Positions 5,627 through 23,612 of a stretch of DNA of 32,000 bases are shown piece by piece; position 1 is the first letter of the stretch; each line of letters begins with the position of its first letter. The stretch is from Paramicrosporidium saccamoebae KSL3 (Eukaryota > Fungi > Cryptomycota). The notes below the pieces were generated by a model that was not told where the DNA came from, did not search any database, and worked only from the letters and a program-made list of their open reading frames with translations. Location: the NCBI GenBank assembly GCA_002794465.1, contig MTSL01000107.1, positions 1-32,000 on the forward strand, in the 5' to 3' direction. Position numbers and translations under genes: made by a program.

Positions 5627-6902
5627 CTACTCTATTTTTTCAAAACATGCTACAAAAAATCCATTCATCCGATCTGCCTTGGGGTCAGCTCTTATGACGT
5701 CATTTCCAAAGGAATATTCGGGGAAACCACGCCTTGGCCATAACGGGAGAGGGTACGGGACAAGCTGAAAAGCTGGCTCGGCTTCGAGGACTTGTCGAAC
5801 TACCTCTTCGTTTTCCTCCTTATGGACTGAGCAAGTGGAATAGACTACCCTCTTCATGTTTGGAAACTGCATGGCGTGCCTCAGAATCATGCATTGGAAA
5901 TTCGACAACGACTGCAGTCGATCTGAATCATAAGTGTCGGTATTTTCAAAGTCTTCCAACATTCCACTACCAGAGCAGCTGGGATCTACTAATCCATATT
6001 CAATCTGTGGGTAATCAGCTGGGTTAGTCTTGAGAAAGTCCATGTTTGCAATCGTCACATGAGTGCACTCGTGCTTCCTAATAGTTTCGGCCAAAATTTT
6101 GAACCGTTTAGGATCCCTCTCAAAGGCACAGACGGAGCCGGAGGACCCCACAGCAGCTGCAAGTTGTGTAGTCTTGTTTCCTGGAGCAGCACAAGCATCC
6201 AACACCGAGGCTCCCGCTGGTGGCTGTAACACGGCGACGGGTATACAACTAGCCTTGTCCTGCAAAACAATTTGTCCTTTGCAGTACATTTCATTCTTTG
6301 TCAAGTCGGTTCCTGGAGGAAATACCAAGAGCCCGCCAATGTGTTCATCTAATGAAAAGCATCGCCCAGACTCGGGAAGACAGCCGTCGAGATATTCATA
6401 GCCCTCGTCTTTGAATTTCTGGATGCATTCGGCCGTCGAAAGGGCCAACGTGTTGATCCGGACGTATCGCATGGGCCTGGGCACATTTTCCTGTGGCGAT
6501 CGCAATTTAGACAACACATACTCTGCTTTTATGCGCGTCTTATGACGTGATATGGGCTCCCACAGCTTTGCACTGCATTCAGGGACTCGGTCATTCACGA
6601 GGTCATGCGCAAGAACAATCGCCAAGCCCGGACGAATCTAAAAATTCCGTAAAATGCCTGCTGTACCTTTCGTTCCTGCTTGAAGAACATGGATTTTTCC
6701 AAGGCTTCGTTTATCCACTTGAAATCTACACAATCAACTTTTAGCATTCAAGAGTACTTTTGCACGTCTCAGTGACGAGTGCAAATAGGGCCTTCTTATT
6801 ACGATATCTCGAACCGTAGCAAAGCGTCTTAATTCTTCCCTTTCCGTTTCGTACGGAATCTACAATAGAAGCGGCTTCGTAGTACAGTCCATCATTTGTC
6901 AT
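5627..6902 (-). CDS. NSUN5: rRNA cytosine-C5 methyltransferase NSUN5/Rcm1; 2 introns (6726-6757, 6638-6666)
   Basis: Spliced N-terminus MTNDGLYYEAASIV...KALFALVTETCKNFKWINEAL...ERKIRPGLAIVLAHDL. Motifs RYVRINTL, LQDKASC, DACAAPGNKTTQLA, DPSCSGSG and VVYSTCSVHKEENE. Confidence 0.95.
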
Positions 6903-6936
6903 TTTAAAACCAACAGAGTCAGGCACCCCTTGCTCA

Positions 6937-7920
6937 ATGACGAACCGGGTCGCAGCACCAAAACTGTCTGGCAAAGACGTAGTATCAGACACGCCACTTT
7001 CGGACCAGAACGTGGCACCAAAACTATCGGTCAAGACACTATCTGACCGTGTCATTTCTATCGAATTAGCGTCCGAGATAAAATCCATTGGGGATGTAAA
7101 GAGTTATTTGGAGAGGCATGGCGTAGTGTCAGCTCAGAAGCAGACACTTATTTCTTGTGGCCGCGTGCTCTTGGACCATGAGCCTGTTCCGGCGCCCGAT
7201 AGCGTCATTCATTTATTCTATTACGAACCGACCGCGCTTATTGCTGACCCCATTGAGGCAGCCGCCGACTGGGACACTAAGAACAGGATGAAGGTATTCA
7301 AGGGACTCTACTTGTTCTCCATCCGCAAGTTCCACGAGGCTGCACCCTTCCTGATTGATTCCCTGACAACATTTAGCGAAACCTCTTTTATTCCGTTCAA
7401 GGACTGTGTAAAATATGCTGCCATTGCATCCATGCTAGTGTTGGACCGACCAACCATACTCAAGACACTTGTCAAGTCTCCCGAGGTTCTGGAAGTCATC
7501 AATGACCTGCCCCACATGGAAGCCTACATCAACTCCCTCTACAACTGCCGCTACCGTGAATTTTTCCTGGCTCTCGGATCGTTGGAGAGTGAAATGAAGA
7601 ATGACTGGCTAATCGAGCCACATGTCCAGTACATCATCAAGGAAATGCGGATCCGTGCCTACACTCAAATTATGCAATCATATCGTAGTCTCACTCTCGA
7701 CTCTATGGCAAAGTCGTTTGGCGTGACTGCCGACTTTATTGACCGCGAGATAAGTCGTTTCATTGCAGCCGGACGACTGAACTGCGTGATTGACAAAGTG
7801 GCAGGACTAGTCATTACCAGTCCTCCAGATCAGCGAAACACAGAGTATGTAGCTCTCATAAAGCAAAGCGATGCTCTTGCCGCACGAATGCAAAAATTGG
7901 GACGCATCCTCAGCTACTGA
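6937..7920 (+). CDS. RPN7: Ubiquitin-like domain fused to the C-terminal (PCI-containing) half of proteasome lid subunit Rpn7/PSMD6
   Basis: From about 7252 the sequence IEAAADWDTKNRMKVFKG...EMRIRAYTQIMQSYRSLTL...SRFIAAGRLNCVIDKV follows PSMD6/Rpn7. Codons at 7021-7221 resemble ubiquitin (VKTL...I.DVK...Q.LI..GR.L.D...S.IHL). Confidence 0.88.
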   Translation: MTNRVAAPKLSGKDVVSDTPLSDQNVAPKLSVKTLSDRVISIELASEIKSIGDVKSYLERHGVVSAQKQTLISCGRVLLDHEPVPAPDSVIHLFYYEPTALIADPIEAAADWDTKNRMKVFKGLYLFSIRKFHEAAPFLIDSLTTFSETSFIPFKDCVKYAAIASMLVLDRPTILKTLVKSPEVLEVINDLPHMEAYINSLYNCRYREFFLALGSLESEMKNDWLIEPHVQYIIKEMRIRAYTQIMQSYRSLTLDSMAKSFGVTADFIDREISRFIAAGRLNCVIDKVAGLVITSPPDQRNTEYVALIKQSDALAARMQKLGRILSY

Positions 7921-8184
7921 TTCAGTAAATACATCACGTAGTGATCTGTAAAGTAGTGGAATAATGATCGGATGAAAGGACTCGGCCTATAACGGTGCCA
8001 AATACTTTGATAAATATATTATAACTATGATTTGTCCTGCACCACCCATTATTAGCCATATCCATAATCATGATCTTGCATTACCATTTATATTTTATGC
8101 ATTATCCCATTATAACTCAAGCCTCTCACCCTCACACATACCTCTTACTCCCCTCACATACACAACTCGCCCCTTCCATCTCAT

Positions 8185-8208
8185 CCCACCCCACCCCACC
8201 CCACCCCA
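8185..8208. repeat. (CCCCA)n tract; G-quadruplex-capable on the minus strand
   Basis: CCCACCCCACCCCACCCCACCCCA, about 145 nt upstream of the ubiquitin ATG. Confidence 0.8.
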
Positions 8209-8267
8209 CTTTACAAATAAACGCCACAATTGGCCATTTGAGCAAATTTGGAAATTGTGGGCTGTGA

Positions 8268-9047
<780 letters not shown>

Positions 9048-9128
9048 ATAAAGAGTCATTATGAGCGGCTAAAAAGTTGGTAACTTATGAAAGCTTGCCA
9101 TAATTACAACTGATTTTAACATACTCAC

Positions 9129-9200
9129 AGCTCTTGACAACTCTTTGACAACTCTTTGACAGCTCTTTGACAACTCTTTATACTCTCTCATACTCTCTCA
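9129..9200. repeat. 11-nt minisatellite (GACAACTCTTT, about 4 copies) plus ATACTCTCTC repeats
   Basis: Read directly in the gap between the convergent UBI and RAD23 stop codons. Confidence 0.8.
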
Positions 9201-9221
9201 CAATAGACCATTTATATACTT

Positions 9222-10207
9222 TCACAGATCCTGATCATTTAAATGTTCCAGCAAATAATTGGCTGCCAATTCTTCATTCTTGTCGCAGGCAAAGAAGGCT
9301 TCAACGACATGCGCTCGTCCGAAACCCATCGACTCTAAGCGTTCAATGGCCTGACGATCTTCTTCAGAAACTTGCAGTACTTGAGCACCAGGAGGAAGCT
9401 CTCCATCATCACCATCGCCTCCGTCATCTTCTTCTTCGTTACTCTCCTCACCCTCACCCTCTCCCTCTCCCTCGCCGTCGGGGTTGGCCCCTTCCATGAT
9501 CAGGGCATAGAATTCTTCGCGATTCTGTTCAATCAACTGCAGAATCTCGGGGCTGTTTTGGCTCAGCTGCTCGATTATTGGCCCCAGCATTTGTGGGTTT
9601 TGTTGAATCAGAGAACGAAGCTGTTGGAACTGAGGGTCGTTTCTCAAAAAGTCCAGAGATCCGGATGATTCATGATGGGCCATGGGTGCTTCATCCTCTT
9701 CCGCAGGCAGCATTCCGGTCGTCAAGTATTCAACGGCACGCTCTGGATTATTAAAGGACGCTCTCATGGCGGCCATGACTTCTTCCTTTCCAAATCCCAT
9801 ATCAACTAGCTTTCCCACGGCATCCTCATAGGCTTCCCCAGTCACCAGCTTGGATTCTGCGTCACCAGTGGCAGACTGAACAACCGGTGTAGCTGGAGTG
9901 GCTGAGGTGGCTCGAGTAGTTGTTCCTGCGGAAACTGGCTTGGGCGTCACAGTCATCAAAACAACAAAATCTCCCTCTTTCAGAGCCGTTTGAGAAATGA
10001 CCTGCTCATTCTCCAAAACTTTGCCTGCATGGATCAGTTTCTGGCGCTCCACGGGGGTATTTTTCGATTCACCCATTTGGGCGATGCGCTCCTTGGCGTT
10101 CAGCACCTAACACTCAATAAATATTCGTCGTGTCCTTTTACCGTTTCATCAGGAGTGACTTCAAGCGCAAATTGGCTTTGTTGTAGCGTCTTGATTACAA
10201 TTCTCAT
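9222..10207 (-). CDS. RAD23: UV excision repair / proteasome shuttle protein Rad23; 1 intron (10107-10141)
   Basis: UBL MRIVIKTLQQSQFALEVTPDET|VLNAKERI...QKLIHAGKVL; UBA1 (LVDMGF...SFNNPERAVEYL); XPC-binding LDFLRNDPQFQQLR; UBA2 (LESMGF...ACDKNEELAANYL). Confidence 0.97.
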
Positions 10208-10240
10208 TGACCCGGCTGCTTGAAACCCCGGTTGTTCCAG

Positions 10241-12235
10241 ATGGGGAAGAAAGCCGCTCCCTCGTCTCTGGCTTTCAAGGCTGGTGCAGCCAAGAGGCTG
10301 CAGGCAAAGCCAAACATGTTTGATCTCAAAGTCAACAAGACCAAGTTTCAAGTCTTGAACAAGAACGTTGTCGGATCCAAGGGCAACCCCACCAGGTCCA
10401 AGGCAAAATCCCTACAGGTTCGTCAAAAGACTCTTTTGCCCGAACTCGGCCGACGCGGCCGAACTGGAGAGTTTGTTGACCGGCGGTTTGGAGAGAAAAC
10501 TCCTGGTCTCTCTAGTGAGGAAAAAATGTTGGAACGTTTTAGCCGTGAAAGACTCAAGACGAACAAGAAAAAGTCAGTCTTCAACCTGAATGACGAGGAC
10601 TACTCCCACACCATGACGTTGACTCATCGTGGTCGCAACATTAATGATCTTGATGCATTCGATTCAGAGCCAGAGGGATCAGACTATGACTCGGACGGAG
10701 GTCTTGATAGTCACATTGTCGGAAGTGGTCATTTTGGTGGTCCTGGAATCGACAATGAAAAGCGCACCAAAGCCGAAATCATGCAAGAGGTCATTTCTAA
10801 AAGCAAGATGCACAAATATGAACGCCAAAGAGTCAAGGATGCAAATACCGTACTGTGTGATGACCTTGATGCTGATTTTCATTCCCTCTTGGATGTGCTA
10901 GAACCTCGCGACTCTTTCAGAGAACGGACACTCCCAAAGGACGATGACTACACTGAAGCTGTTAGGACCATGGCTTTTGAAAAACGTAGTAGGCCATCTG
11001 ACCGCACAAAGACTGAGGAAGAAATCTCCCAGGCTAAAAAGGATAGGCACACAAAAGAGTCTGAATCTCTGCGCAAACGAATGCACGGGGATCTTAATGT
11101 TACAGACTCGGAGGATGAGGAAGAGCATGCAGGCTCTGACGCCGACAAGAGCATTCGCCGGGTCATGGATCAGGCCGGACAGCTCTTGGACACTATCATC
11201 CAAGACACCAACCTTGCCTTGGTAACCGAGGCCTACATTAAACTGGTCGACTTGTGCAAAACCAATTCAGTGATCCCCGTGGCACGCGTCTTCCGAGAAC
11301 GTCTGAGTCTCATCACCGAATCTATGAATGCGCAGATTGAAAACTTTGCTGCTCCAAAGATGCCCAGCAAGGATTCGCTTATCCTATTCCATGTTATTGG
11401 GCGCATTTTCAGCACGTCCGATTACCATCACATTGTTGTTACCCCAGCCCAACTACTGATGAGTGCCTATCTGGGCCATGGAAGAATGACTAGGCCGTTC
11501 CATCTTCTTTCGGCTCTCTTCATTATGCAAACCATGCTCAACTATCAAAAAGTGTCAAAGAGGCTTGTCCCGGAACTTTTTGGCTTGTTGGGCCCACTGT
11601 TAACTCTGTGCTTTGGACTAAAGCGCTCTGGATGGAGCCAGTACTCGGAGGATCGCTACATGTCTCGTTCCGTCCATGATTTACTTGGCCAGGAACTGAC
11701 CAGTGTCCCCAGCGCAAGGGCAATCTCATTTGAAGATTTGAACAATGCTGAAGATGGACAACTTTCAAAGGAAATGGTCACATCCTTCCTCCTCCACATA
11801 CTCACAGAGGCTGTGGAGATTTACAAAGATAATGTCGCGGCGCCCGAGCTCTTTATTCCTCTACTACAGACTCTAAAATGCTGCCCGACGACTGCCGCAG
11901 TCGCACAGCCACTATTGGAGGTGATCAAGTCGAAGCAGGAGGCCCGCAAGCCACTACAACTCCAAAAGTCCAAACCGATTGCAATCCCGCAGCTGATCCC
12001 CGATTTGGATGACGGTCCGAGCCGAGAGGAGAGAGAGCAGAACATGCTCAAGCGCCAGTACAAGAGAGAATTGAAGGGCGCCAAGAAGGAGCTGAAGAAG
12101 GACAGTGCCTTCTTGGCCCAACAAAAGCTTCAAATGAGACTAGAGGCAGATCGCAAATACCAAGACCGGCAACGCCAGATCCTTGGATCCATCTCTAACG
12201 AAACTTCCCATGACGCCAAGAGACGTCGTAAATAG
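10241..12235 (+). CDS. NOP14: Nucleolar 40S biogenesis protein Nop14
   Basis: NMFDLKVNKTKF, GEFVDRRFGE, LERFSRER, FNLND, RTKAEIMQEVISKSKMHKYERQ, RPSDRTKTEEE, HHIVVTPAQL, PLQLQKSKPIAI and RELKGAKKELKKD. Likely ATG at 10241. Confidence 0.93.
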   Translation: MGKKAAPSSLAFKAGAAKRLQAKPNMFDLKVNKTKFQVLNKNVVGSKGNPTRSKAKSLQVRQKTLLPELGRRGRTGEFVDRRFGEKTPGLSSEEKMLERFSRERLKTNKKKSVFNLNDEDYSHTMTLTHRGRNINDLDAFDSEPEGSDYDSDGGLDSHIVGSGHFGGPGIDNEKRTKAEIMQEVISKSKMHKYERQRVKDANTVLCDDLDADFHSLLDVLEPRDSFRERTLPKDDDYTEAVRTMAFEKRSRPSDRTKTEEEISQAKKDRHTKESESLRKRMHGDLNVTDSEDEEEHAGSDADKSIRRVMDQAGQLLDTIIQDTNLALVTEAYIKLVDLCKTNSVIPVARVFRERLSLITESMNAQIENFAAPKMPSKDSLILFHVIGRIFSTSDYHHIVVTPAQLLMSAYLGHGRMTRPFHLLSALFIMQTMLNYQKVSKRLVPELFGLLGPLLTLCFGLKRSGWSQYSEDRYMSRSVHDLLGQELTSVPSARAISFEDLNNAEDGQLSKEMVTSFLLHILTEAVEIYKDNVAAPELFIPLLQTLKCCPTTAAVAQPLLEVIKSKQEARKPLQLQKSKPIAIPQLIPDLDDGPSREEREQNMLKRQYKRELKGAKKELKKDSAFLAQQKLQMRLEADRKYQDRQRQILGSISNETSHDAKRRRK

Positions 12236-13415: not shown

Positions 13416-16250
13416 TCACACATGTGCTAGCTTTTGGGCTTGTAGTGTAGTCTGTTCTTGATACCACTGGTTGATGCGTCTTTGGCCGTCTATCACGGCT
13501 TCCCTCCATCTGGGTTGGTCACAAATGCTATATCGGGTGGCGGATGCCCCATTTCGAATCGTGGACCCCGCATGACACTTTGTTGCCTCGGGTCCATAGA
13601 CGCTGGTAATCCAGTTGTCCGAGTACCAGTCCTTGATCTCAAGGGGAAAGTACCAGTGGAATATTTCATGATGCTTCCTTGATACAAAACTTTGCGTAAG
13701 CAAACGACACTGCCACAGCCGGTCGTTGGGTCCCACAACACCGAAATCATCATTATCGCGAAGTGTCTTTACAAACGTTGTAGTCCATCCGGGACTCTCA
13801 ACCGTTACATCATCATTGACCTGATAAAAGTAGTCATTTCCATCATGTACAGCATCGATAAACAGAATATTCCATAAGAGGGTTATGCATTTTGCCGTCG
13901 GCAACAGGTGATACTTGATTAGGACGGATTCTTTATGCGGTCCAAGCACTACATCGATGGCCTTTTGCATCTCGATCCGGTTCATGTCCAAGAGGGGATC
14001 GTCCCGGTCGTAGCCAATGTAGATGGAGTATTGAAACTTGCTCCACTCGTCCATCTTAATACTAGACACCATTGATCGCAAAAAGTTGTTTACAAGGTGC
14101 GCCGTGGCAGGAGTGTCCTCCTTCTTGTTCTTGCTTGGTATGAGAAAGGCTATCTTTGTTTTTTGACAAGCACGGATAATTGCCTCATCTACTGCTCCCC
14201 TTGCCCAGCTGGAAACATGGCCGCCAGCAAATGCCACAGGATTGTACATAATCTCGGGTCTGATGGTGAGATGGCAATATTGCTGACTACGCTTTGCATG
14301 ATCGTCCGGTTTGGGAAGTAGACTTTTCATTGAGAATACTTTGGCTGCATCCTGCACAGTGCCAATCATGTCATAGTCCACAGGCTTGTTTTGAGAATCT
14401 TTGCCGTGACACGGCAGCCCTTTGACGCGACGTAACCTCTCCGAGTGAACGCGGGAGAATACCTTGCGATCATATCCTTCGACTACCAACGAAGGGAGCT
14501 GATTATCAATAGACAGCCGGGCAAGAATTAGGCCGTCCTTCATTAATATCCTCCTCATATCTTCCAGAATCCCCGTGTCTGGAATGACCGTCTTGGGGCT
14601 AATCCACAAGGCGCTGCCAAAGCGATCTGTAAAAATCTCCAAGACTGAGAGCCGAATATCTACATTGTCCAAACTAATCTTGGTATCCAAATCCATGCCA
14701 AATAAGAGAGCCTCAAGCTCATAATAGTCAACATGCCGCCACAGTTTGATCATTTCGATATTCCCGCTATCAAGGTTCGATCCAATCACTAGGATGAGGG
14801 GCGGCGGTTCCATCGGAGTGACAGAAATTGCGCCGTGAATGGAACCAACAATCTCACGCAGTAACCAAATGTCTTCAGTACTACTGATTGCAGTGATAAT
14901 TACAAGCGGGGGTGGCTTCAAAGTGCCTCCACGGACCAGCGCCTGCAGCCAGTTGGCAGTCTTTGTCAAGTCTCCAATTGATCCCAAACGATAAAAATGA
15001 TGACACCCGTCTTGAACGGCACTCATGCTGGAAATGTCCTCAACCCTCCCCGAAACACTAATACCCTCCTTTTTGGAAGTTTTAATGTAAATATCCGTGG
15101 CCAGCTTTTTCGCTCGAAGCAGCGTCTTGAGCACGTCCGACTCATTTCCAGAATAGTCTGCAACATACAATATGATTAGATAATTGCCATGCTCCTGTCG
15201 ACTGAGCGACTCTAAGAGAATTTCAAGCCGATCCTGCACAAAGGCCGCATACTTTTCTTCTGGACCAATGTCAAGACTGAGACCAATGCGCAGCTTTTGG
15301 GAATTTGCAACTGAATCTCGGTCTTCCGGTTCCAGATACTCAAACAAGTCCGACAACAGCGGGTTTGCAACTGGATAGTTGGCTGTCCGTCCCGAGGTGG
15401 TAGGAAGCAATCGCGCCTGCACTCGAGGGTCCACCTTTTGAAGCCCAACCGATCCCCTCTTCATGATCGCCTGACTGAGCGGCTTCTGAATCTTGGTTTC
15501 TGATGCACAAAATATGCCTCTTCTGCAGTCTAAATGGGGTTTAACTCTTTCAAGAAATCCGGATCGCGTGTACGCCAGCAACGGAAAAATGTGCTCGGCA
15601 GAAACGGGATTCATTTTTGTCGACCGCCCCGTATAGTCGGGTCCGGGCACAATGACCTCGCCCGTCTTTGCAATAGTTTTTAACACTTCCGGAAGAGTAT
15701 TCTTCTCAATCGCATAGCCAACATCCACGTAGACTACCACAGGAAATTCCACCAAGAGATATTCCAAAATGTTTGGCAATGCCCAAGTGGCCTTGGCGGA
15801 CAGCTCTTTCATTCCTGCAGGCAAATTGACCAAAGCTTCAATTTCCAGAGGCTTCACCAGTCGCAGTAGCTTTAATGCCGCTATGGTTTGAGCATCCAGC
15901 GAGCCAAAATAGCCGACATAAATAAATGCAGGTTCCATCTTCCGAATAATATGACTTTGGAGGGACTAGGCAATGGTTAGGGCTGCAACAAATGGTACTT
16001 GGACTAAAGCTTCTAGACGCGACCATGCTGAAGCATCTGACAATATTGTCACATAGGCATTCCCACGAGTCCGGTTCGAATCGGTCGGGATGAACAGCTT
16101 CTCCCTGCCATCTCTAAACTCTGCTGGCAGGCCAAATTTCAGTTTCGCTGGACTTTTAGTGACAATAGTCCGCCACGCCACAACCGCGACGAAAATGACA
16201 ATGGCTCCGATGAAAACTTTCAGGCCCCGACGGGGAACATTTAGGGCCAT
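13416..16250 (-). CDS. Type II membrane glycosyltransferase-like protein GT1, with a doubled two-domain module; 1 intron (15966-15998)
   Basis: N-terminal TM (KVFIGAIVIFVAVVAW). The intron joins LEALVQ|SLQSHIIRKMEP in frame. The C-terminal GT-A-like domain has YIGYD, YFYQVNDD, GVVGP and DWYSDNW. Confidence 0.85.
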
Positions 16251-16378: not shown

Positions 16379-18622
16379 ATGCGACGTGGATCTTATTCAG
16401 GCATACTCATTTTCGCAGTTGCGTGCTTTGCGGCGACAATGGTGATCATTGCCCTTTGGCCCAGCTCTGCAAAGAGTCAAGCTGGCACAAAGCCGATCGG
16501 AAAGGCGCCTACTCTTGAAGAATTGCTGCTGAGCAGCAGAATGCAAGACGAGGAATGCCAGCAGAACATGGATCATATTAATGAACCATCTGAAGGGACA
16601 GTGGAGCAGCAAGCCGAGTTCTTAAAGCGCTTTGAAAAGTCGGCCCGAGAGATGAAACCAAGCGACCCGGGGGGCAGTAATCATGCAGCAAATAGTGTCG
16701 ATCTTGTAGCAAGCGGCTTTGATTTTGTGGCAAACAATGTTGCAGTGGGTAGCACAGCGGGTAATAATGTCGATCCAAGCCCAAATGTTGTCAAAACACC
16801 TCCAAGAAATCTCACATTGAGCAATTCACATGCGGCCAGTCCCCCTTCAAGCAATCCATACCCAAACAACACAAATCCAAGCACCTCGCGTCCAAATGAA
16901 CAACTCGGCAAAGAAATACCAGGCCTCATGGAAGAATACTATGACGGGACAGCGGGACCACGTTTTCCCCACGCCAGAAATCCTACTGAATTTGAAGATC
17001 TGGTCATCTTTACCATCATCCCGTCAATTGAAAATCGGGCATCTTTGGTCCTCCTTAGAGACTTTGTCGGGGTACCATTCTCCCATGGCCTTTTCTTACT
17101 GTAGGGACTACATCAGCTCAGACAAGGAAGACACCACACTCCAACGATTGAAATTTTCACTCCCACCTTGCTTAGCAACATCCCCGACGATATTCTAGAG
17201 GAATTGAGTTGGTGGAATGGGGTTCAGCTGAAGAACATCCACAATTATCTCGGATTGCCCGTCAGCAACGAGACCATCCTGACGTCAAATGAACAACATA
17301 TTCGGCTAGCTTTGCACAGTCGGCTCGTCAAAGAGCATGGTCATTCATTCTGGATCAAATTCGGCTACGTAGTGGAGCCGGAACGAATCGGAATCTATCG
17401 CGCTGAACAGAGCGGATCTGCGGCAAACATTCTCGAAGCACATGCGCGTGGACGCAATGAGGTGATGAAGATGGCCAAAGTCCTCAAGGTTCACGGCTAC
17501 GTCCTGGGTCAGCAAAGCGATCCAGTGCAATACTCTACTGGCAAGGCAGTTGTAGACCGAAAGAAAGCCGAGGAGCAATCTCTTGTGGCAGGGATCTATG
17601 CCCCAAAGAGTCTTGTAGTCGAGGGGTATTCGTTGGAAAAGGGCCTCAAATACATTGACGAGCAACTAAAATGTCTCATCACTCCGAACCAATGTTCCAG
17701 CCCAAACATGGAATACATTTATGACGCATCCGTGTACAGCGTCTTTCCAAGCGATCCCAACTCACACGCGGGATGCATTGTCGACGTCCGAGAAGAGGCC
17801 ATCACCAGTACAATTCTTGTCAACGAGGTTGCGTCAACTCTGGCCAACAATGCAACAAAGGCCATTGTTGCCAAGAACGGGAAAAAGGTTGCAGTAGCCT
17901 TCCCAACCACCTCCAAAGGAATGAAAAAGGGTGAAGATCCAGTGTTCCTCAGAGTTCTGTTGCCTTCCCTAATAAGTTCAGTCACTCTAGAAGAATTCTC
18001 GTCCACAATGTTTACCGTGTACATTGGATTCGACCATGGCGATCCAGTGTTTGAGAATCCCACTCTCCGAAGCAAATACTTGCAGAAGGCTGTAGAGATT
18101 ATTGGCAACAATCCAGTGCAGGTCAAGATGCTGCAGCTCCCCAATGCCAAACGGGTGGCTCTTTTGTGGAATCTGCTCTATTTGCATGCCCTCCGCGAGG
18201 GCGCCGAATACTTTTACCAGCTCAATGATGATCTCCATCTTGAGACTACGGGCTGGCTGACCTACTTTACATCCACCCTAGATGCACATGGCGGGTTTGG
18301 TGTAGTGGGTCCTGCTGACTACCACAACGGGCTCAACTGCGCCATCCTAACTCAGTCCATGGTCACGCCAGTTCACTATGAGATTTTCGGGATGCTCTAC
18401 CCTGTGGAACTTAAAGACTGGAAGAGCGATCGCTGGCTCACCTATGTGTATCAGCCAAACGACACTCACTGCAGACAGGACATTATTGCAAATAACGGCG
18501 GAGCACCAACACGCTACCAGTACTGCGAGTTCCTCAGCTATGTCATCTACGTGGATGCTGGAAAACGTCGAATTGCCGAATGGAAGGCGAAAAAATTGGC
18601 ACGGGAAAAGTCGGCATTGTGA
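16379..18622 (+). CDS. Type II membrane glycosyltransferase-like protein GT2; 1 intron (17072-17104)
   Basis: TM segment GILIFAVACFAATMVIIALW and a Pro/Ser/Asn stem. The intron joins LRDFVG|GLHQLR. C-terminal domain VAVAFPTTSKG, YIGFD, YFYQLNDD, GVVGPAD, DWKSDRW. Confidence 0.87.
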
Positions 18623-18722: not shown

Positions 18723-19676
18723 CTAAATACGACTGATCTTTAGCGAATGGCGTTGCCTGGACTGATCCGTCTTTGCGCGTCGCTTCTTGAAATTAAAGTG
18801 TCCCGAGATGGGTGTATAGGTGACAGGCAGATTGGCATCATTTGGGAGCGTCAGCACCACATACGGAGTTCCATGGCGATCAACCCTTTGAATGTCATAG
18901 TCGCGAGTGTACACAAAGACGTCGTCTCCATCGGCAGCGGGCAGATAGTACCACACAAAGGCGTCATTTGGATCAGTAGCATTGCTCATTGCCTTTACCA
19001 GTGCCCTCTGGTCGCCCTCTTGGGAAATGGGCACTCCATCCACAGTGGCCACGTTTGGATCAGCATCAAAGGTGCATTGTGCAAAGGTCTCGGGTTCTCC
19101 CTCGCCTGGAAATATTGGCGTCATGGAAACCGCCGTGGCATTGGGGTTGTTCGGGTGGCAGAGGTTAGCCAACTGTGGGGTACACACAAAGGACCGTTCG
19201 ATGGCCTGGATGACGTCTTCCTTATTCTCCAACTTCATTTGACTCTGTAACGGCGCCATATTCGTCAGCGATGGAGAGTTTTTCAGTCCCTTTGTTTCTG
19301 CCGACAAGTACTCTGTCCTGCGCAGCCAAGTCACCTCTGTTCTTTGGCCCTTTGTCGTCCCCTCCTTCCCATCGAGTGGCTTCACCAGTGCCTCATCCTC
19401 GGCCGCGAGATACTCATTCATTTGTGGCTTGAACTTTTCCAAATCGACAAAATCAAAAAGTGACGTATTCAAAATATCTACGGGTGCCTCGTGGCGGTAC
19501 TCTTGCTCAATGCTGGAGACCCGAAACGGGATGAATTGGCTCAGGTCGGGTGTGTTTATTGCTAAACGAGAGGCGACCGTAGGTTCAGGCAAACTGTTCT
19601 TGAACTTGACATGACATAGGAATTCTGGAACCTTTTTGAGTGTTCGTCCACGACCCATGACTGCGTCCCTGGACAT
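18723..19676 (-). CDS. PAF1: RNA polymerase II-associated factor Paf1 (short, lacking the acidic tail)
   Basis: EFLCHVKFKNSLPEP, EVTWLRRTEYLS, IQAIERSF, HPNNPNATAV..PIFP, YTRDYD and YTPISGHFNFKKRR. Confidence 0.88.
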   Translation of the reverse strand: MSRDAVMGRGRTLKKVPEFLCHVKFKNSLPEPTVASRLAINTPDLSQFIPFRVSSIEQEYRHEAPVDILNTSLFDFVDLEKFKPQMNEYLAAEDEALVKPLDGKEGTTKGQRTEVTWLRRTEYLSAETKGLKNSPSLTNMAPLQSQMKLENKEDVIQAIERSFVCTPQLANLCHPNNPNATAVSMTPIFPGEGEPETFAQCTFDADPNVATVDGVPISQEGDQRALVKAMSNATDPNDAFVWYYLPAADGDDVFVYTRDYDIQRVDRHGTPYVVLTLPNDANLPVTYTPISGHFNFKKRRAKTDQSRQRHSLKISRI

Positions 19677-20237: not shown

Positions 20238-21293
20238 TTACGGCACAATCTCGGCTACAATTTGTTTGCATTCGACTACTTTGGCCATTGCGGCATCAAA
20301 TATTCGGTCGTATTTTTCCACCACTACCTCCAACGCTTTTATTTCCTCCTGGACCTGGATTGCAGTCTCGTCAGTATCCAATGCAGACATCTTTTCGTCC
20401 ATCATAATCGTTTTAATATCACTCTGATACTGGGATTCCCGGGTGTGGACGTTCTCCAGCTTCATCATTCCATAGTCTCCCCCCAAATCATCCAGCGCTC
20501 CAGAACCGTGCAAATTCAGAGTCTCCAATTCGCGGTCCAGTAATCTGCGTGAAAAGTCCTGGTTCTGCAGCTCTTGCTCAAGCTTCTGTCGAGCATACTC
20601 TAGACGGCTAATGGTGTCTGACTTGGATTCGAGCATCGTTTCGAGCCTTGCAACCTTTTCGCTGCGCTCTGGAGAGATCATTGTGCGCATCGTGTCCTCG
20701 TCCTCTAGGATGGTGGCAGCACATTCGTCGTGTATCGACATTGTCTCCTCGATATCTTTGAGAACGGCGAGCTCATCTGATTCCGCACGATGCATCATCC
20801 CATTCGTTCCAGCTCGGCGATTCTGTTCGTGCAATATGCGTCGAACCAACAGGCTTGCAAGATTGAACTTGTCCGCATCGTTTGCGAGGTGACTGCGCAG
20901 CAATATAGAGCTTGCCATTTGCAACTTTTCGTTGAGATCGTAATCCTGTACTTCTGGAATAGTCCATGCTGCTGACTCTTCATGATGCATGGTCTCGAGA
21001 TTTGACAAGTGCCCCATCCTTGTCATACGTCTTTTCACAATTGTTTCTTTGTGGAGTTGGAAGCTTAGACCAGAACGGCCCGTCGATTTCACCTGACCTT
21101 GGGCCTCAAGTCTGCGAAGTGCCGCCAAAAGTCGTTTTTTCCAATTGGCGGGGAATGTATATTTTCCAACAAACTGCTTTGACACCAGGTTAACCAGAGA
21201 CAAGTAATGCATGGTCGAACATTGCGAACTTTTCATGAGTCGAGTGGCAATTGCCGCATAGGCTGGGTGGTGCGAGTGTCTGTTGCTCGTCAT
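20238..21293 (-). CDS. Protein with a linker-histone (H15)-like winged-helix N-terminus and a C-terminal coiled coil (351 aa)
   Basis: HPAYAAIA...FPANWKKRLLAALRRLEAQGQVKSTGRSGLSFQL resembles the H1 globular domain; the C-terminal half is heptad-rich. Confidence 0.75.
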   Translation of the reverse strand: MTSNRHSHHPAYAAIATRLMKSSQCSTMHYLSLVNLVSKQFVGKYTFPANWKKRLLAALRRLEAQGQVKSTGRSGLSFQLHKETIVKRRMTRMGHLSNLETMHHEESAAWTIPEVQDYDLNEKLQMASSILLRSHLANDADKFNLASLLVRRILHEQNRRAGTNGMMHRAESDELAVLKDIEETMSIHDECAATILEDEDTMRTMISPERSEKVARLETMLESKSDTISRLEYARQKLEQELQNQDFSRRLLDRELETLNLHGSGALDDLGGDYGMMKLENVHTRESQYQSDIKTIMMDEKMSALDTDETAIQVQEEIKALEVVVEKYDRIFDAAMAKVVECKQIVAEIVP

Positions 21294-21335
21294 AGACCGC
21301 TGGCAGTTTTAGCTTTATTGATGAGCTTATTTAAG

Positions 21336-22295
21336 TCATATCTGTAGAACCTCGGCACATTGATCAAACAAGTCTTGCAGATTAGATGCAGCTTCGCGCT
21401 GGAGTCTGATTTGCTCTTCCAGTTGGGATTTTCTATTTTTTTGCTCCAAGAGACGCTGCTGCCTCGCCAATGAACCATTCTGCCGAAAAGGTGCCTCTTC
21501 TGGGATGGCCTCGCCGTAATATTCAAAATTATCATCATGTGCTTCTTGGAAAGATAGGCGTCTCTCGGTGAAATCGCGTTTTTTAGAGCAAATCTGCTCT
21601 TCAAGCTTCTTAATGGACCGAGTCCCATCGTTTACCTTGGCTTCCAATTGTTGGATAATGTCTTGAAGCTTTGCTGCTCTTGTGTCTGAATCCATGATAA
21701 TTTCCTCAAAGTCCTTTTCCCCTGCTCCCGAGGCCTCGTAGTGTTCTTCAAAATGATCCTCTGACTGTTTAGACACAGTCACAGTCTCCCCAAATCCGAT
21801 CGCTTCTTCTGTTTTTAAGCTTTCAAGCAGGAATTCAGTCAATTCGAGGGCCTCGGCGTCAACTTCCTTCTCATGCGCGCTGCCCATCAGTCTGCGTAGA
21901 TACGCTTCTAGATCCTCAAATTCCAAAGCGTCCCCAATGGATGATAATAGAGGCGGCAAGGTTTCTGGCTCGCCGTGAAGATGAACTTTTCGATAGTTAC
22001 GGGTTGGAGTTGTAGGCGGAGTTATTGCCTCAGTGTGGTCCAGCATCAATTGTTCGGCTGATGTTTTTCTATTCCATCGATACGAACTTTTCGAGCCATT
22101 CACTCTCATGATGACATTTCTTTCAACCATCCTCGTCAATGCTTTTGTAGTAAAGGCTTTCCAGTTCGTGGGCAGTCTCAGGGGACCTTGGACATCTCTC
22201 TCTAGCGTAGTCAGAATGCTCCGCCAGTGGATGGTTCTTGTTTGTGACTTTGCAAATACGTGCTCCACAATTTGTTCATAGCTTGGTCTCCTCAT
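21336..22295 (-). CDS. Tandem paralog: H15-like winged helix plus coiled coil (~319 aa)
   Basis: First ATG at 22295: MRRPSYEQIVEHVF...LPTNWKAFTTKALTRMVERNVIMRVNGSKSSYRW. It shares the P.NWK....AL.R motif with its neighbour. Confidence 0.75.
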   Translation of the reverse strand: MRRPSYEQIVEHVFAKSQTRTIHWRSILTTLERDVQGPLRLPTNWKAFTTKALTRMVERNVIMRVNGSKSSYRWNRKTSAEQLMLDHTEAITPPTTPTRNYRKVHLHGEPETLPPLLSSIGDALEFEDLEAYLRRLMGSAHEKEVDAEALELTEFLLESLKTEEAIGFGETVTVSKQSEDHFEEHYEASGAGEKDFEEIIMDSDTRAAKLQDIIQQLEAKVNDGTRSIKKLEEQICSKKRDFTERRLSFQEAHDDNFEYYGEAIPEEAPFRQNGSLARQQRLLEQKNRKSQLEEQIRLQREAASNLQDLFDQCAEVLQI

Positions 22296-22385
22296 ATTTG
22301 CTCGCCGGGTCAAAGTTTACGAGCTTAATGTACCCGTGTAGCCAGAACCATGACTAAGCCTGACGGCACCATGTGATTGGCGGGA

Positions 22386-23612
22386 ATGAGTTCACTCTAC
22401 ACTTTTAACGGACGACTTGCTACTTTTAAAAAGGGCAGCTGGCCTCACAAGTCTGATTATGCTGCCACTCCAGAAACAGTACAACTGCCATCCTTGCTGA
22501 CCAGCTAGATGGCCATGGCCGGTTTCTACAATCGTCCGTTTCCTGGGTCACCAGACAATGTCTGCTGCTTCATGTGTAACAAGAATTTGGACGGCTGGGA
22601 GGCCAGCGACGAGGCCTGGATGGAACATGTCAAACACGCAGCCCATTGTCCACTAGTCCGACTGGATATTGAAGGCAGTCGTCTGTCCACATTCACCATC
22701 GATAACTGGCCACACTTTCACAATCCATCTCTGAATGCTGACAAAATGGCGCGTGCCGGGTTCTTTTACTGGCCTAAATTGCTCCCATCAAAGTCAGAAT
22801 GCGACGACACAAGTGTCTGCTTTCAATGCGGATTGGCTCTCGACGGGTGGGATGCAGATGACGACCCGCGACATGAGCACGCAAAACGGCGTCCAGAATG
22901 TCCGTATATTCGGAGCAATGTTGCCATCCGGCCGTGTTCATTCGAATTTCTGCTTGCCTCAAAACCGGATCAAAACGCTGTCCGACATATTAGTGCCAGG
23001 CCACAGCAGAAGCCCACAGATAAAACGTTTCAACTGCCCACAGTCGCAAAGAAGCCCCCCAAAGCGTCGAGGAAAGGATCAATTGCTCCCAAGTCTGTCG
23101 ATTACGAAGGAACGTCAAAGGCACCGGTGGTAAATGATTATGGGGGGACATTGATTGCACCGACAGGAAGTGGTTATGGGGAAACACTGGTCGTGCCGGT
23201 AGTGTGTGATGATAAGAAACAGTCTATTGCGCCGGTGGTGCGTGAGGAAAGAAAGGCTTCTATTGCTCCAGTGGGGCGCAATGAAAGAAAAACGTCCATT
23301 GCACCATCAGTGAGGAATACCCGAAAGTCATCCATTCTACTGCCAGCGGATGATGACAAAAAGGCGTCCGTTGTAAAATCCATGGTCGAGTCGACGCCTA
23401 AGCAATCTAGGAATTCAGTAGTGAAGAAGGCAAAAGTTTCCACAGACTCGATGCTGCTTACGGGCTTTGAATCAATAATGACAACGACTGATCTGGACAA
23501 GTCGTTAGAATCCTTCCTTGGACATTTAGTCTCCTCCAAACTATCACAATATGATAGGAGGACCGAATTGTTACTATCACAACTCAACGGCGAAGCTATT
23601 AAAGACTTGTAA
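22386..23612 (+). CDS. BIR1: Two-BIR-domain survivin/Bir1-like protein; 1 intron (22479-22508)
   Basis: BIR1: RLATFKKGSWPH...PET|MAMAGFY...VCCFMCNKNLDGWE...EHVKHAAHCP. BIR2: RLSTF...WPH...MARAGFF...VCFQCGLALDGWD...EHAKRRPECP. Both carry the CxxC...H...C zinc ligands. Confidence 0.92.

What the first reader, a model, noticed from the sequence alone, without database searches (positions are those of the whole stretch)
6937..7920. Rpn7 with its N-terminal half replaced by a ubiquitin-like domain
Seen: VKTLSDRVISIELASEIKSIGDVKSYLERHGVVSAQKQTLISCGRVLLDHEPV...SVIHL aligns with ubiquitin [51 protein letters not shown]...STLHL. It lacks the C-terminal GG and runs in frame, with no GT-AG break at the junction, into Rpn7 at IEAAADW. 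About 170 N-terminal Rpn7 residues are absent, and no such exon lies upstream on this strand. Known: canonical Rpn7/PSMD6 has no UBL; its N-terminal helical region contacts the ATPase ring; UBLs bind Rpn1/Rpn10/Rpn13. Inference: a rewired lid subunit, a split gene, or a neofunctionalised paralog. I do not recall this architecture being described.
Basis: partly seen in the sequence, partly recalled or inferred. Interest (0 to 1): 0.8.

Follow-up and report, generated by a model that had tools for sequence, protein, structure and literature searches.

The report
Proteasome lid subunit carrying ubiquitin domain
In the amoeba parasite Paramicrosporidium and its relatives, the proteasome lid subunit Rpn7 has lost the arm that normally touches the ATPase motor and carries a permanently attached, ubiquitin-derived domain instead, an arrangement I found described nowhere.

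Summary
Window 6937-7920 (+) is one uninterrupted 327-codon gene of Paramicrosporidium saccamoebae. It encodes a disordered leader and a ubiquitin-fold domain without the C-terminal GG. This runs straight into the last ~60% of Rpn7/PSMD6: the end of the helical solenoid, the PCI domain and the C-terminal helix. That part is 48% identical to human PSMD6.

It is not an assembly artefact. At least 16 protein clusters (50% identity) from independent assemblies share the architecture and the gene neighbourhood. The ubiquitin-like part is under purifying selection (dN/dS 0.065).

The canonical Rpn7 gene of Rozella lies in the same Nop14/NSUN5 neighbourhood, so the gene was probably remodelled in place. 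No second Rpn7 and no separate N-terminal half turned up, but the whole genome could not be scanned.

A second, more divergent group has the same architecture. It includes the RPN7 of the metchnikovellid Amphiamblys, listed without comment in a published supplement. Mitosporidium and classical microsporidia keep the canonical N-terminus, so the origin (one event or two) is unresolved.

The likely role is inferred only: a lid subunit whose ubiquitin-like domain replaces the lost lid-base contact or docks on a proteasomal ubiquitin receptor.

Verdict: new variant of a known kind.

The parts
6937..7920 (+). Complete coding sequence of the UBL-Rpn7C protein (327 aa plus stop), with no intron
   Evidence: ORF list and sequence. 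It is identical to the gene called in NCBI assembly GCA_002794465.1, contig MTSL01000107.1. The same architecture is seen in about 20 homologues and in at least 16 clusters at 50% identity.
6937..7017 (+). Poorly conserved, probably disordered N-terminal leader (residues 1-27). It contains an imperfect 60-nt-spaced direct repeat (6941-6974 / 7001-7034).
   Evidence: pLDDT below 50 for residues 1-24. dN/dS is 0.42 against 0.065 and 0.014 downstream. Most relatives start METDxVVIPKLTVKTL without this extension.
7018..7221 (+). Ubiquitin-derived beta-grasp domain (residues 28-95) without a C-terminal GG, so not cleavable like ubiquitin
   Evidence: The family profile hits ubiquitin at E about 3e-12. 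PF00240 is hit in 17 of 17 members. AF2 gives strands 29-34, 39-43, 71-73 and 90-93 and helix 51-60, with pLDDT about 90. dN/dS is 0.065. The domain is closer to ubiquitin (47-51 bits) than to the Rad23 UBL (15-24 bits).
7216..7272 (+). Junction (residues 94-112, FYYEPTALIADPIEAAADW) where the last strand of the UBL runs into the first retained Rpn7 helices. It is the most constrained stretch of the gene.
   Evidence: F94, Y96, A100, D104, I106 and W112 are invariant in 22 sequences. There are no non-synonymous changes against the closest relative at dS 0.75. It aligns to canonical R(I/L)GFFYxD...NIxKAKxLIEEGGDWD with a 7-residue deletion.
7252..7458 (+). Remnant of the Rpn7 helical (TPR-like) solenoid. 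Only the last about 70 of 174 positions of the Pfam RPN7 domain are present.
   Evidence: PF10602 at residues 106-174, matching profile positions 103-171/174. AF2 helices run 112-248.
7579..7821 (+). PCI domain (helical part plus winged helix), the module that places Rpn7 in the lid horseshoe
   Evidence: PF01399 at residues 215-295, E 1e-17. AF2 gives a winged helix at 251-293. Foldseek's top hits are PSMD6/Rpn7 chains of 26S structures.
7831..7914 (+). C-terminal helix (residues 299-326), the counterpart of the helix that joins the lid helical bundle
   Evidence: AF2 helix 299-326. It aligns to the canonical C-terminal helix. PF21154 is on record or weakly hit for relatives P0003, P0004, P0012 and P0280.
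5627..6902 (-). Divergently transcribed NSUN5-type rRNA methyltransferase gene. It is a synteny marker, and its start codon lies 34 bp from the Rpn7 start.
   Evidence: Pfam; gene model. It has the same position in relatives. NSUN5 also lies within 10 kb of the canonical Rpn7 of Rozella.
8352..9047 (+). Polyubiquitin gene (three repeats plus an NSH tail) immediately downstream. It is a candidate donor of the ubiquitin-fold domain and a synteny marker.
   Evidence: ORF translation. A ubiquitin gene is also directly downstream in relatives L002, L003, L006 and in the divergent L010.
9222..10207 (-). Rad23 (UBL-UBA shuttle factor) gene with a 35-nt intron; a synteny marker
   Evidence: Pfam; first exon and intron read from the sequence. 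Rad23 is also adjacent in L002, on the P0004 contig and in L010.
10241..12235 (+). Nop14 gene, a synteny marker shared with the Rozella Rpn7 locus

Best explanation
This is the Rpn7 (PSMD6) lid subunit of the Paramicrosporidium saccamoebae 26S proteasome, remodelled in place.

Shown:
- The gene keeps the end of the helical solenoid, the PCI domain and the C-terminal helix.
- The first about 140-165 residues are gone. That is the TPR-like arm which in canonical proteasomes contacts the ATPase domain of Rpt6.
- In their place is a ubiquitin-derived beta-grasp domain joined rigidly, without GG, to the first retained helix. It cannot be released by ubiquitin-processing enzymes.
- The arrangement is conserved and under selection across a whole clade.

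Inferred:
- The retained parts are those that canonical Rpn7 uses to enter the lid horseshoe and helical bundle, so the protein should still assemble into the lid.
- It is the only Rpn7 of the organism.
- The ubiquitin-like domain sits where the lost arm began and takes over or replaces the lid-base contact. It would do so by binding the ATPase ring directly or by docking on a proteasomal ubiquitin/UBL receptor.
- Rpn1 is, from my memory of 26S structures, the nearest such receptor to Rpn7's N-terminal arm. That geometry was not checked here.
- The residues equivalent to ubiquitin's K6, L8, K11, G47, Q49 and V70 are invariant or nearly so, and I44 stays hydrophobic. That points to a conserved protein-protein interface on the classical ubiquitin recognition face.

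My estimates for the parts of this claim:
- real remodelled Rpn7 gene: about 0.9
- sole Rpn7 of the organism: about 0.7
- UBL acts as an intra-proteasomal docking or contact module: about 0.35
For: - Gene and domains.
- Rpn7 identity of the C-terminal part: Foldseek's top hits are PSMD6/Rpn7 chains of human, spinach and yeast 26S structures. Identity is 48% to human over 222 columns (E 2e-20), against about 20% to CSN1. Identity to canonical fungal Rpn7 is 50-53% over 216 columns.
- Ubiquitin fold.
- Not an artefact: the architecture recurs in independent assemblies (NCBI GCA_047514055.1, JGI metagenomes, several Logan runs) with the same order GPN - NSUN5 - Rpn7 - ubiquitin - Rad23 - Nop14. 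There are at least 16 clusters at 50% identity in 1.84 billion representatives.
- The UBL is translated and selected: against the closest relative, dS is about 0.62-0.69, dN/dS is 0.065 for the UBL and 0.014 for Rpn7C, and the junction has no non-synonymous change.
- A divergent member is a complete ORF on one assembled transcript, TSA GHVP01050340.
- Positional orthology: the canonical Rpn7 of Rozella has Nop14 about 4 kb away and NSUN5 about 7-10 kb away.
- The gene tree of the shared part follows the accepted species tree. The clade UBL forms + Mitosporidium + microsporidia appears in 289 of 300 bootstraps.
- No second Rpn7 and no N-terminal half named for this organism appeared in searches that returned canonical Rpn7 of many fungi, animals and plants. 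None is present in the window or held loci.
- Jespersen et al. list the UBL form as the RPN7 of Amphiamblys.
- The N-terminal TPR domain of Rpn7 contacts the Rpt6 ATPase domain (PMC6910829).
- Related parasites tolerate shortened N-termini of Rpn5, Rpn6 and Rpn7, and lack Rpn12 and Rpn13 (PMC8615682; PMC9666519).
- Conserved ubiquitin-face residues.
Against: - I could not scan the whole P. saccamoebae genome or its reads. The absence of a canonical Rpn7 or a separate N-terminal half therefore rests on protein-database searches with word prefilters.
- I had no transcript or proteome data for this species.
- The window protein's own PF00240 score is below Pfam's cut-off.
- The coordinates of the AF2 model were not available. 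I cannot say whether the conserved ubiquitin face is exposed or packed against the Rpn7 helices.
- Every statement about what the UBL binds is inference.
- Mitosporidium and classical microsporidia keep a canonical N-terminus, while Paramicrosporidium-type and metchnikovellid-type sequences have the UBL. This patchy distribution does not fit a simple single replacement in one ancestor.
Confidence: 0.6

Rival explanations
1. It is a neofunctionalised paralog. The UBL-Rpn7C form arose once, as a duplicate or an alternative 5' form of Rpn7, in an ancestor of Paramicrosporidium and Microsporidia. It coexisted with canonical Rpn7 and was then kept or lost differentially. In P. saccamoebae it may still coexist with a canonical copy and do something other than the standard lid job.
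For: The UBL form occurs in the Paramicrosporidium clade and in metchnikovellid-type sequences (Amphiamblys, P0392, P0412). Mitosporidium, Encephalitozoon and Vairimorpha, which branch between or beside them, have canonical N-termini.

Both UBL types share features absent from every canonical sequence examined:
- the same junction, (L/I)F.(Y/V/I)E(P/E)
- A at position -3 of DWD
- loss of the otherwise invariant R after DWD
- an F in TFSExSF
- DW in K.DWLL

Both types also have ubiquitin directly downstream and Rad23 next door.
Against: - No canonical Rpn7 of P. saccamoebae was returned by searches that found those of many other fungi.
- The gene occupies the neighbourhood of Rozella's canonical Rpn7.
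- The Rpn7C tree does not unite the two UBL types (21 of 300). It places the metchnikovellid type with canonical microsporidia (252 of 300), though long-branch attraction could cause that.
- The retained part is barely more diverged than expected for a parasite lineage: 50-53% identity to canonical sequences, against 58-65% among them.
Confidence: 0.2
2. It is a split gene. The N-terminal arm of Rpn7 is still made from a separate gene elsewhere in the genome and joins the complex non-covalently, so the UBL is an addition and not a replacement.
For: Only that it could not be excluded genome-wide with the tools at hand.
Against: - tblastn with nine N-terminal halves, and an HMM of them, find nothing in the 32-kb window or in L001-L009 (best E 0.5-3.7).
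- A profile search with N-terminal halves returned no protein named for this organism. The short hits I read looked like exon fragments of animal or other fungal genes.
- Related parasites live with shortened Rpn7 N-termini.
Confidence: 0.05
3. The gene is the lid subunit, but the UBL is only a structural cap. After the arm was deleted, a compact domain from the neighbouring ubiquitin gene sealed the exposed hydrophobic end of the truncated solenoid. It binds no receptor and has no signalling role.
For: - The junction is short, invariant and predicted with high confidence (pLDDT 82-89). This suggests a rigid, packed connection, not a tethered domain.
- pTM of 0.76 for a two-part protein also suggests a fixed arrangement.
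- The conserved 'ubiquitin face' could be the surface packed against the Rpn7 helices.
Against: - A cap would not need to keep ubiquitin-like surface residues (K33, L35, R38, V77, F94) invariant across sequences that are only 35-65% identical in this domain.
- The loops of the domain vary freely in length while that face does not.
- This remains untested without coordinates or experiments.
Confidence: 0.25
4. It is an artefact: a chimeric assembly, or an over-extended gene model in which translation really starts after the UBL.
For: - The start codon lies only 34 bp from the divergent NSUN5 start.
- The first methionine after the UBL (M118) would still give a PCI protein.
Against: - The same fusion and the same neighbours occur in at least ten independent assemblies.
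- There is strong purifying selection on the UBL and junction at saturating-free dS.
- A complete fused ORF sits on a transcript in a divergent member.
- 33-34-bp divergent spacers are normal in this compact genome; Rad23/Nop14 has one as well.
Confidence: 0.02

Closest known systems
Canonical Rpn7 / PSMD6 (26S proteasome lid, PCI subunit)
   Same: - The end of the helical solenoid, the PCI domain and the C-terminal helix are present.
- Identity is 48% to human PSMD6 and 34% to yeast Rpn7 over about 222-229 aligned positions.
- The gene has the same chromosomal neighbourhood as Rozella Rpn7.
   Different: - It lacks the first about 140-165 residues, the N-terminal TPR-like arm that contacts the Rpt6 ATPase domain (PMC6910829).
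- It carries a ubiquitin-fold domain there instead.
- The otherwise invariant R in DWDR is lost.
Reduced proteasome subunits of Microsporidia (Huntsman et al. 2021, PMC8615682; Jespersen et al. 2022, PMC9666519)
   Same: This is the same broad lineage of intracellular parasites. N-termini of Rpn5, Rpn6 and Rpn7 are reported as shortened and several subunits are lost. This shows that the lid-base interface is evolutionarily plastic in this lineage.
   Different: Encephalitozoon and Vairimorpha Rpn7 still begin with the canonical helical N-terminus and have no ubiquitin-fold domain. In the window gene the arm is not merely shortened but exchanged for another fold.
RPN7 of the metchnikovellid Amphiamblys sp., as listed in Supplementary Data of PMC9666519, together with P0392 and P0412
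   Same: It has the same three-part architecture (UBL, RPN7 tail, PCI) and the same kind of junction, with no GG. PF00240 scores 28-38 bits, above the cut-off. In L010 it is also next to Rad23 and ubiquitin.
   Different: - It is only 26-31% identical to the window protein in the shared part.
- It keeps 3-4 more residues of the helix before DWD.
- It groups with canonical microsporidia in the NJ tree, so it may be an independent fusion.
- The source paper does not comment on the UBL.
Natural ubiquitin fusion proteins (ubiquitin-eL40, ubiquitin-eS31, polyubiquitin)
   Same: A ubiquitin-derived unit is encoded in frame at the N-terminus of a subunit of a large machine. Ubiquitin is the closest relative of the domain, and a ubiquitin gene lies next door.
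   Different: From established knowledge, those fusions are cleaved after GG to release free ubiquitin. This family has no GG and the last strand continues into the Rpn7 helices, so the domain stays attached.
UBL-bearing proteasome visitors (Rad23, Dsk2, Ubp6/USP14, UBLCP1)
   Same: A non-cleavable ubiquitin-like domain is associated with the proteasome. From established knowledge, their UBLs dock on Rpn1, Rpn10 or Rpn13 through the L8/I44/V70 face. The equivalents of that face are conserved here.
   Different: Those proteins bind reversibly and are sub-stoichiometric. Here the UBL is part of a core scaffold subunit. Whether it binds a receptor at all is untested.

Membership tests
Rpn7 / PSMD6 | PCI domain (helical part plus winged helix) | tested here: met
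   PF01399 at residues 215-295, E 1e-17. AF2 shows a winged helix.
Rpn7 / PSMD6 | RPN7-type helical domain (PF10602) in front of the PCI domain | tested here: inconclusive
   The family is hit well above its cut-off (66.5 against 29.6 bits). However, only profile positions 103-171 of 174 are present and the first about 100 positions are absent.
Rpn7 / PSMD6 | Closer to Rpn7 than to the paralogous PCI proteins (CSN1, Rpn3, Rpn5, Rpn6, eIF3e) | tested here: met
   In Foldseek, PSMD6/Rpn7 chains rank first at 33-48% identity (42% for spinach). CSN1 is at 18-21% and the other PCI proteins at 12-17%.
Rpn7 / PSMD6 | C-terminal helix that enters the lid helical bundle | tested here: met
   AF2 helix 299-326. 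It aligns with the canonical helix. PF21154 is recorded for close relatives but is not reported for the window protein itself at E <= 0.1.
Rpn7 / PSMD6 | N-terminal TPR-like arm that contacts the ATPase ring (Rpt6) | tested here: not met
   Canonical sequences align only from residue 144-167 onward. No such helices are encoded in the window. The contact is described in PMC6910829.
Rpn7 / PSMD6 | Orthology (same locus, gene tree follows species tree, single copy) | tested here: inconclusive
   The Nop14/NSUN5 neighbourhood is shared with Rozella Rpn7 and the gene tree resembles the species tree. Single copy is supported only by protein-database searches, because the whole genome was not searchable.
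Rpn7 / PSMD6 | Physical presence in the 19S lid | not testable with these tools
   This needs purification with mass spectrometry, or cryo-EM.
Ubiquitin family (PF00240), ubiquitin-like domain | Beta-grasp fold with ubiquitin-type sequence profile | tested here: met
   The family profile against ubiquitin gives E about 3e-12. 17 of 17 members hit PF00240. Divergent members and Amphiamblys score above the cut-off. AF2 gives the topology at pLDDT about 90. The window sequence alone scores 17.8-22 bits, below the 25.4 cut-off.
Ubiquitin-like modifiers (ubiquitin, NEDD8, SUMO) | C-terminal di-glycine exposed by processing and used for conjugation | tested here: not met
   There is no GG in any family member. 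The last strand continues as FYYEP into Rpn7. It is therefore an integral ubiquitin-like domain and not a modifier.
Proteasome-docking UBL domains (Rad23/Ubp6 type) | Binding to Rpn1, Rpn10 or Rpn13 through the L8/I44/V70 face | not testable with these tools
   Only the conservation of the equivalent residues (L35, I72, F94, plus K33, R38, G75, V77) could be shown.

The most novel reading that the evidence does not exclude
These parasites build a ubiquitin-fold ligand into the scaffold of their own proteasome. The Rpn7-borne domain would permanently occupy a ubiquitin/UBL receptor site or touch the ATPase ring. It would so replace the lost lid-base contact and hold the particle in a particular, for example activated, conformational state. 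The fusion arose either twice independently next to a ubiquitin gene, or once as an alternative form that coexisted with canonical Rpn7 before lineages kept one or the other.
Probability: 0.25. Interest if true: 0.8.

Novelty: new variant of a known kind. Interest (0 to 1): 0.62.

Why it matters
As far as I know, no core stoichiometric subunit of the 26S proteasome contains a ubiquitin fold. UBL domains are known on transient visitors, which use them to dock on the particle and stimulate it.

A lid scaffold subunit that swapped its motor-contacting arm for a fixed ubiquitin-derived domain is a natural experiment on three points:
- how much of the lid-base interface is needed
- what a permanently present UBL does to proteasome conformation
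- how reductive evolution in intracellular parasites rewires an essential machine by local gene fusion

The distribution adds an evolutionary question that is directly testable: a rare, complex architecture arose either twice or through a two-form intermediate. The form is present in the Paramicrosporidium clade and in metchnikovellids, and absent from Rozella, Mitosporidium and classical microsporidia.

The form could also serve as a sequence marker for these poorly sampled lineages in metagenomes.

Tried and rejected
1. I looked for the missing N-terminal half on both strands of the window and in nine related loci, with tblastn and an HMM. Nothing was found.

2. I ran a profile search with nine canonical N-terminal halves against the 5.8-billion-protein collection. 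It returned mostly exon fragments of animal and fungal genes, none attributable to this lineage. It did not even list the full-length proteins the profile was built from. Its negative result is therefore weak.

3. I tried a mixed alignment to reach Mitosporidium or microsporidian Rpn7 by protein search. The list filled with canonical Rpn7 of other eukaryotes. The answer came instead from the supplementary table of PMC9666519.

4. I asked whether the UBL came from the neighbouring Rad23 gene. This was rejected, because ubiquitin scores 47-51 bits against the family profile and the Rad23 UBLs score 15-24 bits.

5. I tried to decide between one origin and two by comparing the two UBL types. Each is closer to ubiquitin than to the other, which is uninformative because ubiquitin barely changes.

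6. NJ trees give conflicting signals, depending on whether fast-evolving microsporidia are included. No maximum-likelihood program was available.

8. Searching the genome paper of P. saccamoebae and its supplements for proteasome or Rpn7 found nothing. A search for run SRR29645026 found no paper.

9. I considered CSN1 as the identity of the C-terminal part and rejected it.
Full report
**What is in the window**

The window is the first 32 kb of contig MTSL01000107.1 of NCBI assembly GCA_002794465.1. Accession MTSL00000000 is the genome of Paramicrosporidium saccamoebae, an intranuclear parasite of amoebae placed in Rozellomycota, next to Microsporidia (PMC5701793).

The ORF 6937..7920 (+) is uninterrupted and encodes 327 residues. 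Pfam finds three things:
- The RPN7 family at residues 106-174, but only its last 70 of 174 profile positions.
- A PCI domain at residues 215-295.
- A sub-threshold ubiquitin match at residues 31-84 (17.8 bits; cut-off 25.4).

The gene is flanked by:
- a divergent NSUN5-type methyltransferase gene whose start codon is 34 bp away
- a three-unit polyubiquitin gene
- Rad23
- Nop14

**Is the ubiquitin-like domain real?**

Yes. The first homologue search returned about twenty proteins with the same layout, from 92% down to 44% identity. Most already carry a precomputed PF00240 hit. Their alignment shows strongly conserved motifs: VKTL(S/T)DR, G(R)VL.D and (I/L)(H/Y)LFYYEP.AL..DPI(E/D).A.DWD.KNR.

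- A profile of the 17 UBL regions matches 76-residue ubiquitin chains in the PDB at E about 3e-12 over ubiquitin residues 3-69.
- Each of the 17 sequences hits PF00240 on its own.
- AlphaFold2 on the 22-sequence alignment gives mean pLDDT 86 and pTM 0.76. It predicts a disordered leader (1-24) and a beta-grasp (strands 29-34, 39-43, 71-73, 90-93; helix 51-60). Helices follow up to 248, then a winged helix and a long C-terminal helix at 299-326.
- There is no di-glycine. Where ubiquitin reads [10 protein letters not shown], the family reads HLFYYEP and continues into Rpn7.

**Is the rest really Rpn7, and how much is missing?**

Foldseek against the PDB ranks PSMD6/Rpn7 chains of human, spinach and yeast 26S proteasomes first. 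Identity is 48% to human PSMD6 over 222 columns (E 2e-20). CSN1 follows at about 20%.

Canonical Rpn7 proteins of Rozella, Calcarisporiella, Mortierella, Ambispora, Apophysomyces and Schizosaccharomyces align to the window only from their residues 144-167 onward. So about 140-165 residues are absent.

The multiple alignment places the break in the canonical stretch R(I/L)GFFYxDxxLxxxNIxKAKxLIEEGGDWD. The family has xIHLFYYEPxALxADP, a 7-residue gap, then IExAxDWD. The missing part is the N-terminal TPR domain with which Rpn7 contacts the ATPase domain of Rpt6 (PMC6910829).

**Artefact, pseudogene or over-extended model?**

None of these.

- The same fusion with the same neighbours (GPN ATPase, NSUN5, ubiquitin, Rad23, Nop14) is found in JGI metagenome contigs, in several Logan assemblies of unrelated runs and in another NCBI assembly, GCA_047514055.1.
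- An exhaustive HMMER search of 1.84 billion representatives with the family profile found at least 16 clusters (50% identity) that match from the UBL through the C-terminus.
- Against the closest relative (92% protein identity, dS about 0.62-0.69), dN/dS is 0.065 for the UBL and 0.014 for the Rpn7 part. It is zero for the junction and 0.42 for the 27-residue leader.
- The UBL is therefore translated and constrained.
- The short spacer to NSUN5 is conserved in the relative. It is matched by a 33-bp spacer between Rad23 and Nop14, so it is simply how this compact genome is built.

**Ortholog, paralog or split gene?**

- No N-terminal half is encoded anywhere in the window or in loci L001-L009.
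- Three searches of the 5.8-billion-protein collection contain the annotated proteome of this organism. They returned canonical Rpn7 of Rozella, Paraphelidium, many Mucoromycota, Zoopagomycota, chytrids, animals and plants. They returned no second Rpn7 and no N-terminal fragment named for Paramicrosporidium.
- These searches use word prefilters, so the negative result is moderate evidence, not proof.
- In Rozella allomycis the canonical Rpn7 gene has Nop14 about 4 kb to one side and NSUN5 about 7-10 kb to the other. The same two genes bracket the window gene. Two shared neighbours within 10 kb across such a distance are very unlikely by chance, so the gene was remodelled at the ancestral Rpn7 locus.
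- In the retained 216 columns the window protein is 50-53% identical to canonical fungal Rpn7. Those proteins are 58-65% identical to each other. That is a moderate acceleration, normal for a parasite lineage.

**A second group with the same architecture**

The exhaustive search also found two very divergent members, P0392 and P0412 (about 31% identity in the shared part). Their UBLs pass Pfam's cut-off.

- P0392 lies on a 13-kb contig of 23-29% G+C with 50-80-bp spacers. It sits between a Rad23 gene and a ubiquitin gene.
- P0412 is a complete ORF on transcript GHVP01050340. That transcriptome is attributed to the gregarine Polyrhabdina sp. (PMC10304595).
- From my own knowledge, Polyrhabdina is a host of metchnikovellid microsporidia, so a hyperparasite origin is plausible but unproven.
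- The supplementary table of Jespersen et al. (PMC9666519) lists as RPN7 of the metchnikovellid Amphiamblys sp. a 313-residue protein of exactly this kind. Its scores are PF00240 37.6 bits, RPN7 profile positions 100-173, and PCI. It is 40% identical to P0392.
- The paper's text does not mention a ubiquitin-like domain.
- In the same table the RPN7 of Mitosporidium, Encephalitozoon, Vairimorpha and Rozella begin with the canonical helical N-terminus. No other species in the table has the metchnikovellid-type motif.

**One origin or two?**

This is unresolved.

NJ trees on the shared Rpn7 part reproduce the accepted species tree:
- Rozella branches outside.
- A clade of all UBL forms plus Mitosporidium plus microsporidia appears in 289 of 300 bootstraps.
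- The Paramicrosporidium type is monophyletic in 237 of 300.
- The metchnikovellid type is monophyletic in 298 of 300 and joins canonical microsporidia in 252 of 300.
- All UBL forms together are recovered in only 21 of 300.

That topology argues for orthology of the C-terminal part and, taken literally, for two independent fusions. Long-branch attraction between the fast-evolving sequences could produce the same picture.

Several points speak for a single event:
- the same breakpoint and junction motif
- four signature residues shared by both UBL types and absent from every canonical sequence inspected
- the shared adjacency to ubiquitin and Rad23

A single event would require that canonical and UBL forms coexisted for a time, as tandem duplicates or alternative 5' ends, before lineages kept one of them.

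Both UBL types are closer to ubiquitin than to each other or to Rad23's UBL. This points to ubiquitin as the source but does not discriminate between the two scenarios.

**How it most likely works**

Shown:
- The protein keeps the parts that in canonical Rpn7 form the horseshoe contact (PCI) and the bundle helix.
- It lacks the arm that touches Rpt6.
- It carries a non-cleavable ubiquitin fold joined by an invariant, confidently predicted junction.

Inferred from established knowledge of the lid:
- It still assembles between Rpn6 and Rpn3, and the UBL sits at the stump of the arm, on the side facing the ATPase ring.
- The equivalents of ubiquitin K6, L8, K11, G47, Q49 and V70 (K33, L35, R38, G75, V77, F94) are invariant or nearly so, and I44 (I72) stays hydrophobic. 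Meanwhile the loops change length freely.
- My preferred reading is therefore that this face is a conserved interface.

Two possibilities for that interface:
- It contacts the base: an Rpt subunit or a UBL receptor such as Rpn1. It then substitutes for the lost lid-base contact, perhaps with the activating effect known for UBL domains.
- It is simply packed against the Rpn7 helices as a cap.

Microsporidia lack Rpn12 and Rpn13 and have shortened lid arms (PMC8615682; PMC9666519). This shows that the lineage tolerates and explores changes at exactly this interface.

**Comparison with what is known, and novelty**

The protein is an Rpn7 by sequence, fold and locus, but it fails one defining feature of the family, the N-terminal arm. 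Its extra domain is a member of the ubiquitin family but not a modifier.

Its nearest functional analogues are the UBL domains of Rad23, Dsk2, Ubp6/USP14 and UBLCP1. These belong to reversible visitors, not to a scaffold subunit. Its nearest genetic analogues are the ubiquitin-ribosomal protein fusions, which are cleaved.

Five literature searches found no description of a ubiquitin-like domain on Rpn7/PSMD6. The sequences are public, one of them in a published table, but the feature seems not to have been noticed. I rate it a new variant of a known kind.

**Limits**

- The whole genome and its reads could not be searched.
- No transcript or protein data for this species were examined.
- The trees are distance-based.
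- The organisms behind P0392 and P0412 are inferred.
- Everything about binding partners is inference.

Noticed in passing
window 9222-10207 (-): The Rad23 gene has a first exon (10207-10142, MRIVIKTLQQSQFALEVTPDET) and a 35-nt GT-AG intron (10141-10107). Together these complete its ubiquitin-like domain. The gene model on record starts at 10076 and so lacks the first third of the UBL.
   Followed up: partly
window 6941-6974 and 7001-7034: There is an imperfect direct repeat (74% identity, spacing 60 nt) inside the 5' coding leader. It gives the duplicated peptide APKLSGKD / APKLSVKT. It is shared in part with the closest relative (L008) but absent from most family members, which start METDxVVIPKLTVKTL.
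   Followed up: partly
window 6902-6937 and 10207-10241: Two divergent gene pairs (NSUN5/Rpn7 and Rad23/Nop14) have only 33-34 bp between their start codons. Promoters and 5' UTRs must therefore overlap the neighbouring coding sequence or be extremely short.
   Followed up: no
window 5627-12235; L002, L006, L010: Three ubiquitin-system genes (UBL-Rpn7, ubiquitin or polyubiquitin, Rad23) are clustered within 3.3 kb. The cluster persists in relatives as divergent as the AT-rich contig L010. The Rozella Rpn7 locus has neither ubiquitin nor Rad23 nearby.
   Followed up: partly
L013 10001-12579 (Rozella allomycis KE561324.1): In Rozella the canonical Rpn7 gene is followed, 17 bp away and tail to tail, by a gene for another PCI protein with a PSMD12/CSN4-type N-terminal domain (probably Rpn5 or CSN4). 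No such gene lies next to Rpn7 in the window.
   Followed up: no
Supplementary Data (file 4) of PMC9666519, row Amphiamblys_sp., column RPN7: The published table of microsporidian proteasome subunits contains a UBL-Rpn7C protein for the metchnikovellid Amphiamblys. The text of the paper does not mention any ubiquitin-like domain.
   Followed up: yes
window 13416-15938 (-), 17168-18622 (+), 20238-22313 (-), 23649-24935 (-), 28227-30002 (-): Several long ORFs (325-840 aa) have no Pfam match at E <= 1e-5. The 840-aa gene keeps its position next to Nop14 in the relative L002.
   Followed up: no
window 22509-23612 (+): This is a gene with two BIR (inhibitor-of-apoptosis) domains (E 1.5e-33). Paf1 (18723-19676, -) and a Cdc5/Cef1-type Myb splicing factor (25981-27189, +) lie nearby.
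   Followed up: no
L002 5828-6610, and proteins P0005-P0007, P0009, P0010, P0014-P0017: Relatives of the gene carry introns at two different positions, after ...DFIDR and after ...EFFxTL. Gene callers truncated them there. The window gene has no intron, so intron content varies within this clade.
   Followed up: no
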